Shown piece after piece: positions 38,350-47,217 of a DNA stretch of 64,000 bases. The DNA comes from Podarcis erhardii. Lineage: Eukaryota. Location of the stretch: the NCBI GenBank assembly GCA_964252035.1, contig OZ176204.1; one strand, given 5' to 3'. The position numbers and the translations under genes were made by a program. The notes below the pieces were generated by a model. The model had not been told where the DNA came from, did no database searches, and worked only from the letters and a program-made list of their open reading frames with translations. How positions within the stretch are numbered: position 1 is the stretch's first letter; each line of letters starts with the position of its first letter.

Positions 38350-38900
38350 CCATCTAAGTACTTTGGTGAGCAGATGACGAGCATAGAGTTTGGAGGGGAT
38401 ATCCAGCAGGCTAATGGGGGGGGGGTAGTTTTTGGGGAGGGTTTTATTTCCTTTTTTGTAGATTGGCACAATGATGTTCAATTTCCAACCAGCTGTCATT
38501 TGAGCTGTATTATTTATGTAGGTGTAGAGCTTAGCCAAGATGGGTTGCCACCAGTCCATATGTGTCATAAATTAGCTCTGGTAGCATCATGTCTTCACCT
38601 TGTACTTTATTTAGTTTTAAGCTCTCTATCAGAGATTTTATCCCTGCAGGGGTCACCCCTTGCCACTCTGGAAAATTTGACTGATCAATGATCACCTCGG
38701 CATCGGGTGATTGCCCTGTCTGTTTTCCAAAAAGTTCAGCATAGTAATCCACCCAATGTTGTGCTGATACGGTGGCGTCTAGTGTTGATCTTGATTCATT
38801 CATGCCCCGAGATACCAAATACGAAACAAGAAGAGGTGGGAGAAAATGGGAGGACTTACTTTGATAATTATAATATCTGTGAGATTTAAGAAAGACATCA
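38350..38900 (-). pseudogene. non-LTR retrotransposon ORF2 internal fragment (linker plus start of reverse transcriptase), frameshifted
   Basis: IKSLIESLKLNKVQGEDMMLPELI and WKLNIIVPIYKKGNKTLPKNYPPPISLLDIPSKLY match the KAPG.D and W..PI.KKG..NYRPISLL RT motifs. Confidence 0.8.
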
Positions 38901-42769: not shown

Positions 42770-45119
42770 CTCACCACAGCCAACCAGTTGCCTCCAGAAA
42801 GCCCATAGGTCAGACCTGAGTGCAAAAGCTTTCTCTTCAAGCTGTTTATCTGCAGTATAATTTTATAATGATGTCAAAACATACATATCTTTATACAGTT
42901 GTAAGCATTGTTGTAAGTATCTCGTTATGTGGTGGCTGTTTTAAGAAACATGAAGTGTATATGCAGATAACAGGCAGATAATATTAAACATAGAAGAATG
43001 TGTACTATAGGCAAGCATTGCATCAGTGGGTGGGGTGGAGATAATGAATGAGAACAAAGCAGGCCTGGAGGAGAAAAGTTAACCCTTTTGTCCCCTGCCA
43101 TGTTTCTCAGGAAAATGAGCTTTCTGAGGCTGGTATCTGTTTTTTGGGGGAGGGAGGATCCTTCCCAATGGTGCCACCCTAAGCCACAGTGCCCCTCCAT
43201 TTCCCATCCATGTCCCATTTCCCAAACTTGAAAATTCAGTTCGCATTACCTGATGATCATTTTCTCATTGTTACATGCGAAAAACAAACCTAGGCCGGGA
43301 TATTTCCCCTTCTTTTTTGATCCAATGTTTTCGTCTGAAAAAGTTGGAAACATCATAATTCTAATGCATGAGACAGAGGGATATGTTTGTTTTAAAATGA
43401 AATCAAATAAAATATTGTTGCCAGGGCAGTTTTTTTTGTTTTAATTCTGCACCAGGAAAAGTCAAATGAACAATGACTCTCCTCTTCCTCCCACTGTTAA
43501 GCATAACTTGTGAAACTGCTTCTAGATTGACCTGCTTTGACAAAATGTGAGACCTTCTGGCTTTGTACAGGCCTTTTCCTTACATCTGTACAACTCCAAA
43601 CTGAGGTGACTTGGCATTTAGATATGAAGAGGGAGGCTGGGCTGTACCCTCTATTTCTACCACTTCAAGTGAAGTGGAGATAATTTGGACAATTTGGACA
43701 AAGCGGAGATACAGGAACAAGCTGAGATTGGCTTCTTTTGTTTGGGACACCCTCAGGAGATTCTCTTCCTCCAAAAACACTCAAGGACCCCTGAAATCAA
43801 TAAACCTCCCCAGCCCACTTTAATAATGTCAGGCGTTGGGTCTCTGGAAACATATTGTCCTTGCTATTTTCATTTTCTTAACAAAATAATGCCCTAGCAT
43901 TTAAAAAATCTGTCTGCTACGTTGATGTAAGTTGCTTCAATTGGCTTAGTAAAGTGGGATGTAATTTCTTTTAAAATGAACAAACCATTCAGTAGAAAGG
44001 TCAGTGAAACACACTGTGCAGGGAAAGTGCCAGGCATACAACACCAAGATGCCTTCTCTGCTCCCTAGCCTGGCAGATGCTGACCTTGCTCCACATTTCA
44101 TCCCACCTGAATCAAGAGCCTATTGTCCTCCGGAGTGACAAGTAATTTGATAACTCTGATTCGTGATGATGGCCACCTTGAAAGCGAATTAAACTCTTCA
44201 AGGCTATTGTGGGGCCTGGGCAATTGAAGCCTCTGCCATTAAGCTTCATGGGTCCATTGATTGGGGCTTCAAATATGGGCTTTCATATTCTAAATGAGAA
44301 GTGGATCTAGTAGAAGAGTTTTTGATGCTTTATGAAAGTGTACACTTTTTCACACTTCCAATTGGGGGGGGGGACCCCAGAAAGCCCGATTTATTTCCTC
44401 CATGTTCTGAGCCACTTCTCCCTGAGCCATTTGATTCCTGCCTGAGTTTGGAACAAGCCAACCTCCCTCCCCGGCTTACTATAATTTGCCATATGAAGCT
44501 ACCTTTTGCAGAAACAGGATGTTCAGAAGCCTTGCATGACAGCTGCCCAAAGAAACACATTAAGTAAACACAACCATGATGCCACAGGGACATCTGAAGT
44601 GGCAGCTGCTCAAAAGGGAATTTAGATGCAACGAGCATTTTTCCGAGCAGAGGCCTCAAAATTAAAATATTTTCTGCGTTAATGAGTCAGTTGATTACAG
44701 TGCTTTATTGAGATAAATACCAAAAGGATAGTCCATTTTTTTGTAACTGGACATTATGACTGAGAATTAATTGCCCAATGGCTGGAGTGGTTGCAACATC
44801 CATTGAAAAGATCAATGGGCAAAGCTCTTGGAGCAGGGAGAATGAACATGCAGGCACTTGAATTGTCTCAAGTGGTGGGTGTTGATGGTTTGTTTTGAAA
44901 CATAGATCTCGAAAGACTCCTGAGTAGCATTTTAAGGCTGCAGTTCTTGCCTCCCTTACCTGGAAGTAAGCCCACTGAATTCAATACAACTTCTTATGGA
45001 CCGGACTAAAACGGTTTGCTGCCTTTCTCTCTCTGAAAGGAAAAAAATGAATGTGATTATTGAAAAGCCATCCTCGCTACAAATGCAAGCATCCAGTCCA
45101 TTGACGGCATAATAGACAT

Positions 45120-45960
45120 GAATGAATGAAACTTTATTTGCGTCAGCCATCGGCCATAGCAACAAAAAAACATTGTGATATACACAGAATAAAAGAAAAA
45201 GTCACTTATATAAAACACAGTTTAGGGTTCTGAATCAGCAGTCAAATAGCGGACCTTATTCTGATTGCCCCAGCTAGAAACCTTGCAACCTTCGCAGTCA
45301 TCTGCTCCTCTTGATCTGCCAGGAGAAACAACACTATGGCAGTGGTTGGGTGACCCAGAATGGTCAATAAAAGAGGCGTGATAATCTTGTTCCTCAGGTC
45401 TTTGTAGAGAGTGCATGCGAGGAGGGCATGAGCCACTGATTTGGTGCCGCCATCTCCACAGGGACATAAGCATTTTTCATATGGAATCTGTTGGAATCAA
45501 CCCTCAAGTACAGCCAACATTCAGTCTTGTGAGGGTGAAGGCATGTCTATATTTTGGAATTGCTAGATTATACAGATAGGGTGGCAGAGAGTCAAAGTGG
45601 GAGGATGGAAAATGATCATACCATGGGCAAAATTTCCTTATGGTGGCCAAATTGGTCTGACACTCAATATCATTTAGGCGTTGGCAAATTAGACTGTTTG
45701 CTTTGCTGTAACCCATGGTGAGTAGCTGTTGTGGGGATAAACCACAAGAGTGTAGATTTTGATAGACAATTTTAGACCAGGCACTCTTATGACAGTCTTG
45801 TTGCACTAGGGATATTAGACCGGGGGGATTTGAAGTTGAATGTCCTGCACCAGATCTGTATTTCTACCAAGGAGAGATTGGCCTCTAGGCGCAATGATGC
45901 GTTTGGGACACAGGGTGGTACAGAGAAAATTAGCCCATGGATCCATGATAAGTGCCAGAT
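45120..45960 (-). mobile_element. 5'-truncated non-LTR retrotransposon 3' end with C-terminal Cys/His knuckle (RTE-X-like, clade uncertain)
   Basis: minus strand: IFSVPPCVPNASLRLEANL..., RHAFTLTRLNV, AVLEG*FQQIPYEKCLCPCGDGGTKSVAHALLACTLYKDLR, stop at 45242, AATAAA, (CATT)n tail. Confidence 0.8.
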
Positions 45961-46022
45961 GGATGTGAGGGCGATCTGGCTGCGACATCTGTCACCCCAT
46001 TGATCGCCAGAGTTGATTTGGC
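45961..46022 (+). pseudogene. RN7SKP: 7SK snRNA 5' fragment (nt 1 to about 62), 3'-truncated retrocopy
   Basis: GGATGTGAGGGCGATCTGGCTGCGACATCTGTCACCCCATTGATCGCCAGAGTTGATTTGGC matches the recalled human 7SK 5' end at 60/62 positions and starts at +1; no PSE/TATA upstream, no oligo-T terminator. Confidence 0.92.
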
Positions 46023-47217
46023 ATAACTGACATAATCTGAAACACTCTTTCTGTATCCAGTTTTTCACCAGAAATAGTGTTTCCAAGAAACCCTAACATG
46101 ACTTTATTTTATATAAAGATATTATATAAAATGGTATAAAAGCAGTTTAACCAAACAGTTCTTGGGAAGCTGAAGGGTTGTGGGCTTTTCTTCCCTGTCG
46201 CCAGCCGATTGCAAGAAAACTCCTATGGATGTCAGGTATGAGAAACTACACAGAATTCAACCTTCCTGCTAGAGACAATGTATTGCATCCTACAGATGAA
46301 GAGGAATGAATAACCTCAAAGCTATGAGTTGGACTGTCTATTGGAAAAAGGAAGGAGTCTATATGTGACAATGAGATCGCCCAGCACTCCTTCCACTTGC
46401 TTTCGTCAATAACTTTAACAAGCTAGCCAGGGGGTGTAGTAGGTGCAAGATTACAAATGAATCACATACACTGTATTCAGTGGGCCAACCATTACTTTGC
46501 AGTGCACTGCTCCAAACTAGAGGTAACTTACAACACGTGCATTTAACTTGTGCACGTTCAGCTTTACACACTTGCCAATTTTATTATTAGTAGTATTAAA
46601 AGGGGAGCATTAAACCTAATGTGCGATTTTGACTTTACACACCATTCATGGAAAATAACTCCAGCATAAGTTGAGAATCACCTGTATATATATATATATA
46701 TATATATACAAAAACTGAAACTAGCCAGATCTTCTTACCTCCCTTTCCTTGCTTGGGTCACCCAGAACTGATTCCCCCTATGCAGACATTTCTAAATGAC
46801 TTTAATTCCTGCTCACATTACAAGGGGCATTATCAGGAGGACCTGAGCCCCAAGTTATTATTATTTTTGCACTTTGTCCTGGATCTCCTGCCCTTACCCC
46901 CACCCCCTTTAAAAAAAAAAAAAACCTCTGGAATTTGACCTCAATTTGCATCTAGGCATATAAATTAGCATATGAAAAAATGTGCTTTTTAAAAAAAAAA
47001 TCATAAAATTTACACACCACTTGATTGCAAGGGAGGGTCCCTCAAAGGAGTTTACAAAAAGGATAAAAAAATGAAATTATCAGTAGAAGCAGCTAATAAC
47101 CACTATTTAAAACATTAAAAAATTGTTTTATGAGTCTGTGAACCGAGTCTTCTAAGGGCCCAGCTAATGTCCCTGAAGCTGGCCAATGAAAGGCATAATT
47201 AAATCTGCACATTTGCT

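What the first reader, a model, noticed from the sequence alone, without database searches (positions are those of the whole stretch)
45106..46033. Inverted 7SK-LINE chimera within one TSD: apparent twin priming on a cellular RNA
On the LINE sense (minus) strand the order is: TSD, antisense 7SK nt 59 to 1, 5'-truncated LINE, AATAAA and (CATT)n, TSD. The flanks ggcataatagacat (45106-19) and ggcataactgacat (46020-33) match at 12/14. The right copy begins GGC, which is also 7SK nt 60-62, and it matches 7SK nt 60-71 at 8/12. The 7SK copy runs exactly to +1 and then joins the LINE. This is the pattern expected if the second target-strand 3' end annealed to 7SK RNA, was extended to the RNA 5' end, and was joined to the LINE cDNA. 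Known snRNA-LINE chimeras (U6-L1) are mostly co-oriented and use full-length snRNA, and classical twin priming uses the same RNA twice. An inverted 7SK capture by a non-L1 LINE in a reptile would imply that 7SK is present at the retrotransposition complex. The arrangement is seen directly; the mechanism is inference from a single, aged copy.
Basis: partly seen in the sequence, partly recalled or inferred. Interest (0 to 1): 0.8.

Follow-up and report, generated by a model that had tools for sequence, protein, structure and literature searches.

The report
Backwards 7SK piece joined to LINE
In a lacertid lizard genome, an old broken copy of a non-L1 jumping gene lies head-to-head with the first 59 bases of 7SK RNA inside one 14-base target duplication; this looks like one insertion primed from both cut DNA ends, a kind of event already described for mammalian L1.

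Summary
The arrangement is real. On the + strand, the order is:
- a 14-nt repeat (45106-45119);
- a (TTCA)3 tail and AATAAA;
- the last ~240 codons of a LINE ORF2 in antisense (to ~45948);
- a 12-nt spacer;
- 7SK nt 1-59 in sense (45961-46019);
- the second 14-nt repeat (46020-46033, 12/14 identical).

Random site pairs reach that repeat score in 17 of 3000 trials with ±6 nt of freedom, and in 0 of 20000 at fixed borders. Repeats around the LINE alone or around 7SK alone are at chance level.

LINE homology does not resume beyond 46033, and LINE relatives carry LINE sequence where the window has spacer plus 7SK. The LINE is not L1. It belongs to the CR1/L2-like group: a microsatellite tail, a PF14529-type endonuclease in full-length relatives, and only RT-core similarity to human ORF2p.

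The best reading is a twin-priming-type chimera (about 0.6). The mechanism is already published: inverted U1/U2/U5/U6-L1 chimeras (2015), and antisense 7SK/L1, 5S and tRNA chimeras (2026). This scan also noted L1-7SK chimeras elsewhere in this genome. What is new is the non-L1 partner in a reptile.

The parts
45106..45119 (.). Left copy of the 14-nt target-site duplication (ggcataatagacat)
   Evidence: 12/14 identical to 46020-46033 at the exact outer borders. Null 17/3000 with +-6 nt freedom; 0/20000 at fixed borders.
45120..45131 (-). LINE 3' tail, (TTCA)3 on the LINE sense strand; no poly(A)
   Evidence: read directly. The last T of the left repeat could also belong to the tail (1-2 nt overlap).
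45132..45241 (-). LINE 3' UTR with AATAAA (45139-45134) and a conserved terminal motif
   Evidence: relative L001 1033-1068 matches 45167-45132 at 89%. alignment.
45242..45948 (-). 5'-truncated remnant of LINE ORF2, about the last 240 codons with stop. Holds a C-terminal Cys/His motif, two frameshifts and several stops.
   Evidence: P0001 aa 585-820 matches 45930-45248 in three frames; weaker homology (9/18 nt) continues to about 45948.
45949..45960 (.). 12-nt spacer (+-3 nt) that is neither LINE nor 7SK; probably filler ('5' extra nucleotides') at the joint of the two cDNAs
   Evidence: about 1/12 match to the conserved LE-x-VQ codons of the relatives; its likeness to the target (8/10) is reached by about 9-10% of random sequences.
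45961..46019 (+). 7SK RNA nt 1-59, antisense to the LINE; ends at the last base of the SL1 apical loop
   Evidence: RF00100 model 12-95 aligned from 45972. The structure line puts the loop at nt 49-59, and nt 60-62 pair with nt 46-48.
46020..46033 (.). Right copy of the 14-nt duplication (ggcataactgacat). Its first three bases equal 7SK nt 60-62, and 8 of its first 12 equal nt 60-71.

Best explanation
One retrotransposition event of a CR1/L2-like (non-L1) LINE, in which both ends of the staggered target break primed reverse transcription on different RNAs.

Proposed steps:
1. The + strand was nicked after ...GACAT, and the (TTCA)n tail of the LINE RNA was copied from that end. This gave the antisense LINE cDNA (45120 to about 45948).
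2. The other strand was nicked 14 nt away. Its freed 3' overhang ends in GCC, which paired with 7SK G60-G61-C62 at the 3' edge of the SL1 apical loop, with scattered further pairing up to nt 71.
3. The reverse transcriptase copied nt 59 down to the very 5' end of 7SK.
4. The two cDNA ends were joined with 12 filler bases, and fill-in of the overhangs produced the 14-nt duplication.

Shown: the order, orientation and borders of the parts, the duplication, the shared GGC, the truncation of the LINE, and the spacer.

Inferred: that it was one event, which enzyme copied 7SK, and how the ends were joined.
For: - Orientation: 7SK is sense on the strand that carries the LINE first-strand cDNA. No antisense 7SK RNA is known, so the 7SK cDNA must have been primed from the opposite DNA end.
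- One duplication encloses both parts and is far better than any duplication around either part alone (score 8 against 4 and 3; null 17/3000).
- There is primer-template microhomology at the breakpoint: 3 nt exact, 8/12 overall.
- The 7SK copy runs to nt 1, as expected for run-off at the RNA 5' end.
- The breakpoint lies at a loop edge. The same was reported for U5 in inverted U5/L1 chimeras (PMC4476161) and for the 5S and tRNA 5' fragments (PMC13174262).
- Three of four human 7SK/L1 chimeras have the same antisense, 5'-part-facing-L1 layout within TSDs.
- A 14-nt overhang fits the finding that 5' inversions go with TSDs of 10-20 bp. Filler at 5' junctions is common for L2-clade LINEs (PMC4245944).
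- LINE relatives have LINE sequence where the window has spacer plus 7SK, and there is no LINE homology beyond 46033.
- Unchecked scan notes report an L1-7SK chimera in this genome with a 7SK piece of 58-61 nt.
Against: - It is a single, aged copy: 2/14 differences between the repeats, and two frameshifts plus several stops in the LINE.
- The 12-nt spacer means the two cDNAs are not joined directly. It weakly resembles the target (8/10, p about 0.1), which a two-step model would predict.
- The L2-clade element ZfL2-1 produced no 5' inversions and only ~5-bp TSDs in cell assays.
- The LINE border rests on relatives of only 66-69% nucleotide identity.
Confidence: 0.6

Rival explanations
1. Two successive target-primed events at the same nucleotide. 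The LINE inserted first with the 14-nt duplication. Later, an endonuclease nicked the regenerated target at its left edge and a 3'-truncated 7SK retrocopy (nt 1-59/62) was made there, leaving the spacer as a decayed short duplication of its own.
For: The spacer resembles the start of the right repeat: the core ATAAGTGCCA against ATAACTGACA is 8/10. Unchecked scan notes list a stand-alone 84-nt 7SK 5' retrocopy with a TSD in this genome, so internally primed 7SK retrocopies may exist on their own. A target site restored by a TSD can be cut again.
Against: The spacer likeness is reached by 9-10% of random sequences and needs two indels to be in register. The model requires exact re-use of one phosphodiester bond. 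It also leaves unexplained why 7SK 5' fragments lie head-to-head with LINE 5' ends repeatedly in human and, by unchecked notes, in this genome.
Confidence: 0.2
2. Unrelated neighbours: an old 7SK fragment and a LINE that happen to lie side by side, with the 12/14 repeat a chance match.
For: Genomes hold many LINE ends and small-RNA retrocopies, and this was found by a scan of many windows, so some chance adjacency is expected. The Rfam score is below the gathering threshold.
Against: The repeat sits exactly at both independently defined outer borders (null 0/20000 at fixed borders, 17/3000 with freedom). 7SK identity is 46/48 in the aligned part. Neither part has a duplication of its own above chance.
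Confidence: 0.07
3. A DNA-level rearrangement or an assembly error created the junction, for example an inversion or a collapsed repeat.
Against: The window has no N and no other copy of the LINE or of 7SK that could have been mis-joined. Twenty-two runs of eight coded organisms hold 30-78% of the sampled words of 44100-47100, although that does not resolve the joint. A rearrangement would not produce a flanking duplication.
Confidence: 0.04

Closest known systems
Human antisense 7SK/LINE-1 chimeric insertions (Cell Genomics 2026, PMC13174262, Table S3)
   Same: A 5' part of 7SK in antisense, facing the 5' end of a 5'-truncated LINE, with both inside one TSD. The authors ascribe antisense chimeras to twin priming.
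   Different: There the partner is L1 with poly(A) and the 7SK pieces span about nt 10-15 to 235-238. Here the partner is a CR1/L2-like LINE with a (TTCA)n tail, the piece is nt 1-59, and a 12-nt spacer lies at the joint.
Inverted 3'-truncated U1/U2/U5/U6-L1 chimeras (Doucet et al. 2015, PMC4476161)
   Same: Opposite orientation, 3' truncation of the small RNA in a loop, complementarity between the target and the RNA at the junction, and TSDs; explained by twin priming.
   Different: Spliceosomal snRNAs and mammalian L1. [quoted passage not shown]
Classical twin priming (5'-inverted L1; Ostertag and Kazazian 2001, cited)
   Same: Two reverse transcriptions from the two ends of the staggered break, joined inside one TSD of 10-20 bp.
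   Different: Classical twin priming uses the same LINE RNA twice; here the second template is a cellular RNA. In cell assays the L2-clade element ZfL2-1 gave no inversions.
U6/L1 template-switch or RNA-ligation chimeras
   Same: A small nuclear RNA copy fused to the 5' end of a truncated LINE within one TSD.
   Different: U6 is full-length and co-oriented with the LINE. That layout cannot give the inverted order seen here.
L1-7SK head-to-head chimeras noted elsewhere in this genome by this scan (s1-232448, s1-234775)
   Same: Same genome, backwards-facing 7SK inside one TSD; one has a piece of 58-61 nt, close to the 59-62 here.
   Different: Their partner is a young L1. These are AI notes that I could not check.

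Membership tests
7SK RNA (Rfam RF00100) derived sequence | Sequence and structure match at or above the family's gathering score | tested here: not met
   19.5 bits against a gathering score of 35 (E 0.038). Only 59 of 331 nt are present, so it is a fragment and not a gene; no hit at the gathering score anywhere in the window.
7SK RNA (Rfam RF00100) derived sequence | Near-identity to the conserved 5' end, starting at nt 1 | tested here: met
   ungapped alignment of 45972-46022 to model positions 12-62, with 46/48 identical in nt 12-59. That nt 1-11 match is read against my own knowledge of 7SK.
Twin-priming-type inverted small-RNA/LINE chimera | Small-RNA piece in opposite orientation, its 5' end facing the LINE 5' end, 3'-truncated | tested here: met
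Twin-priming-type inverted small-RNA/LINE chimera | One target-site duplication around both parts, and none around either part alone | tested here: met
   12/14 at the outer borders (null 17/3000). Best for 7SK alone is 8/10 and for the LINE alone 7/9, both within chance..
Twin-priming-type inverted small-RNA/LINE chimera | Complementarity between the second-strand 3' overhang and the RNA at the breakpoint | tested here: met
   GGC shared (nt 60-62) and 8/12 over nt 60-71. Excluding the first three bases, 5/9, about 5% by chance (my binomial estimate).
Twin-priming-type inverted small-RNA/LINE chimera | Orthologous empty site with one copy of the target, and no intermediate state | not testable with these tools
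One search shows that relatives exist.
L1 clade LINE | Poly(A) tail and full-length ORF2p similarity to L1 | tested here: not met
   (TTCA)3 tail; the full-length relative P0009 matches human ORF2p only in the RT core (aa 471-800, E 1e-25), about as well as R2 (1e-20).
CR1/L2-like (Jockey-group) LINE | APE-type endonuclease plus RT, a C-terminal Cys/His motif, and a short microsatellite tail | tested here: met
   relatives carry PF03372, PF14529 and PF00078; the motif C-x-C...H....C in window:45245-45496:-; the tail.
CR1/L2-like (Jockey-group) LINE | Phylogenetic placement with named CR1 or L2 reference elements | not tested
   No named reference elements were on hand. Source names of the relatives are generic.
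U6/L1-type template-switch chimera | Small RNA co-oriented with the LINE, usually full length | tested here: not met
   opposite orientation, and 59 of 331 nt.

The most novel reading that the evidence does not exclude
The 3' edge of the 7SK SL1 apical loop (nt ~59-62) is a recurrent second-strand priming point, or the end of a discrete 7SK 5' fragment. It would be used by both L1 and CR1/L2-like LINEs in lacertid lizards. That would mean 7SK RNA is regularly present at target-primed reverse-transcription intermediates whatever the LINE clade, and that non-L1 reverse transcriptases can start from the second nick in vivo, although ZfL2-1 did not do so in cell assays.
Probability: 0.25. Interest if true: 0.55.

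Novelty: new variant of a known kind. Interest (0 to 1): 0.38.

Why it matters
Inverted small-RNA/LINE chimeras are the main natural record that the second cut DNA end can prime reverse transcription on a different RNA. So far that record is almost wholly from mammalian L1. A case with a CR1/L2-like element and a 14-nt duplication suggests the ability is not special to L1. That bears on models in which overhang length and host factors decide 5'-end joining (PMC4245944). If the 7SK breakpoint near nt 59-62 recurs across LINE clades, it would point to a property of the 7SK particle, such as an accessible or cleaved SL1 loop, and would give a cheap genome-wide test. On its own, one aged copy adds an example, not a mechanism.

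Tried and rejected
- **Read laying.** No empty-site, polymorphism or repeat-border evidence came from reads. Two local scripts read them only for translation and for repeat and spacer statistics inside the closed sandbox.
- **Other copies in the window.** There is no other copy of the LINE or of 7SK.
- **Pfam.** It gave nothing for the four LINE pieces themselves.
- **Word-index protein searches.** Searches with the 84-aa and 53-aa pieces found nothing. The search with P0009 gave relatives but no informative names.
- **ORF1 of the full-length relative L004.** No match among solved structures, so CR1 versus L2 stays open.
- **Spacer as a third target copy.** Rejected as not significant.
- **LINE continuing beyond 46033.** Rejected.
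- **7SK as part of the LINE family consensus.** Rejected: relatives L001-L003 continue with ORF2 sequence there.
- **Literature.** No paper in the library reports 7SK chimeras in squamates.
Full report
**What is in the sequence**

On the + strand the order is:
- ggcataatagacat (45106-45119);
- gaatgaatgaaa, which is (TTCA)3 on the minus strand (45120-45131);
- the complement of AATAAA (45134-45139);
- about 830 nt of LINE in antisense;
- the 7SK 5' end in sense;
- ggcataactgacat (46020-46033).

Rfam's 7SK model aligns 45972-46052 to model positions 12-95, without gaps up to nt 62. This puts nt 1 at 45961 and nt 59 at 46019. In the displayed nt 12-59, 46 of 48 bases agree with the consensus; the mismatches are at nt 51 and at nt 59, the latter in a CpG. 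The score (19.5 bits, E 0.038) is below the gathering score of 35, as expected for 59 of 331 nt. That the first 11 bases equal the 7SK 5' end rests on my own knowledge of the RNA. Beyond nt 62 the identity collapses.

**Is the flanking repeat more than chance?**

I scored all repeats of 8-20 nt within ±6 nt of the two outer borders.
- The best is the 12/14 pair at offsets 0/0.
- Random site pairs in the window reached that score in 17 of 3000 trials.
- A 14-mer with at least 12 matches at fixed borders occurred in 0 of 20000 trials.
- The best repeat around 7SK alone (8/10) and around the LINE alone (7/9) are both ordinary under the same null.

**What the LINE is**

- The 119-aa stop-free piece window:45507-45863:- found 36 proteins. 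The best is an 821-aa RT protein of Podarcis muralis (P0001, 57% identity).
- A local tblastn against the window, with 45957-46022 masked, aligns P0001 aa 585-820 colinearly to 45930-45248 in three frames. The copy therefore has two frameshifts and several stops.
- Full-length relatives carry an APE-type endonuclease (PF03372, PF14529) and RVT_1.
- One full-length relative matches human L1 ORF2p only in the RT core (E 1e-25), about as well as it matches R2 (1e-20).
- Together with the (TTCA)3 tail and the C-terminal Cys/His motif, this makes it a non-L1, CR1/L2-like LINE. I could not place it as CR1 or L2: the source names are generic, and the 649-aa ORF1 of a full-length relative has no known match.

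**Where the LINE ends**

Three DNA relatives (L001, 69% identical over 45931-45233 and 89% over the 3' UTR end; L002; L003) were aligned with the window. So were 13 protein relatives. The relatives share a conserved LE-x-VQ-x-KFLR-x-IL-x-P-x-C stretch.
- The window matches well from IFSVPPC downwards.
- It matches weakly (9/18 nt) over 45931-45948.
- It matches at about 1/12 over 45949-45960.

So the LINE is truncated near 45948, and 12 nt (±3) lie between it and 7SK +1.

The spacer loosely resembles the target (8/10 core). However, 9-10% of random window sequences do as well in a semi-global alignment, so I treat this as filler. About half of the genomic copies of the L2-clade element ZfL2-2 carry such 5' extra nucleotides (PMC4245944).

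- No relative, protein or DNA, finds LINE homology to the right of 46023. The only other LINE piece in the window is an unrelated RT fragment at 38350-38818.
- The relatives continue with ORF2 sequence where the window has spacer plus 7SK, so 7SK is not part of the family.

**Mechanism**

The 7SK piece is sense on the strand that holds the LINE first-strand cDNA. Its own cDNA must therefore lie on the other strand and must have been primed from the right-hand DNA end. That end, after a second nick 14 nt from the first, is the complement of the right repeat. It terminates in GCC, opposite 7SK G60-G61-C62.

In Rfam's structure line the SL1 apical loop is nt 49-59, and nt 60-62 close it. Copying therefore started at the loop's 3' edge and ran off the RNA's 5' end. 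The two cDNAs were then joined with filler, and the overhangs were filled in. This is the twin-priming layout with a second template. The arrangement is shown; the single event, the enzyme and the joining route are inferred.

**What is already known**

- Doucet et al. 2015 (PMC4476161) described 3'-truncated U1, U2, U5 and U6 copies inverted relative to L1. They reported L1-type cleavage sites, junction complementarity and truncation in a loop, and proposed exactly this model. They also showed that lizard U6 chimeras form with L1, L2 and RTE elements, by template switching.
- The 2026 Cell Genomics paper (PMC13174262) adds 7SK/L1 chimeras. Three of four are antisense 5' parts (nt 10-15 to 235-238) facing the L1 5' end within TSDs. 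It also adds antisense 5S (1-45) and tRNA (1-37) fragments, likewise ascribed to twin priming.
- By contrast, ZfL2-1 gave ~5-bp TSDs and no 5' inversion in cell assays. Inversions went with TSDs of 10-20 bp (PMC4245944). The 14-nt duplication here fits that rule.
- This scan's own unchecked notes list, in the same lacertid genome, an L1-7SK chimera with a 58-61-nt 7SK piece, an A-tailed antisense 7SK/L1 pair, an 84-nt 7SK 5' retrocopy, an inverted U2/LINE-tail chimera and 5'-inverted BovB/RTE copies. I could not test these.

**What could not be done**

The orthologous empty-site test, the read check of the joint and repeat-border mapping by depth are therefore missing.
- Twenty-two runs of eight coded organisms hold 30-78% of the sampled words of 44100-47100. 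Close relatives exist, but nothing can be said about the joint in them.
Local databases were masked, and two local scripts used the letters only for translation and repeat statistics.

**Verdict**

This is a real, single-TSD, inverted chimera of 7SK nt 1-59 and a CR1/L2-like LINE, with a 12-nt spacer. My probabilities are:
- one twin-priming-type event: about 0.6;
- two events at the same bond: about 0.2;
- chance adjacency: about 0.07;
- rearrangement or assembly error: about 0.04.

It is a new variant of a published kind (non-L1 partner, reptile host, shorter 7SK piece), not a new mechanism. The most interesting lead is the possibly recurrent breakpoint at nt ~59-62 across LINE clades, which a genome-wide census could test.

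Noticed in passing
window 38350-38818 (minus strand): A second, unrelated LINE fragment of the same broad group. It matches the N-terminal part of the RT of P0001, P0005, P0009, P0028 and P0032 (48-54% identity in the best piece, 38350 to about 38565) and lies inside the stretch another note calls a PrRP-type receptor pair.
   Followed up: no
window 46027-46028 against 45113-45114: At the only two positions where the right repeat differs from the left one (CT against TA), the right copy equals 7SK nt 67-68 (CU). With two sites this is about 1 in 9 by chance; no mechanism is proposed.
   Followed up: partly
window 46978-47039 (minus strand): Weak Rfam match to ST7-AS2 conserved region 1 (20.8 bits against a gathering score of 80, E 0.66), with a well-matched core GGUGUGUAAAUU. 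Most likely chance.
   Followed up: no
L004:32-1981 (Logan contig of a full-length relative): The full-length relative of this LINE has a 649-aa ORF1 with no precomputed Pfam hit and no match among solved structures. It is an uncharacterised ORF1 type for a lizard CR1/L2-like element.
   Followed up: partly
L001 (ENA metagenome assembly contig k141_45192, 1175 nt): The closest DNA relative of the lizard LINE comes from a metagenome assembly. It is presumably host DNA carried into that sample.
   Followed up: no
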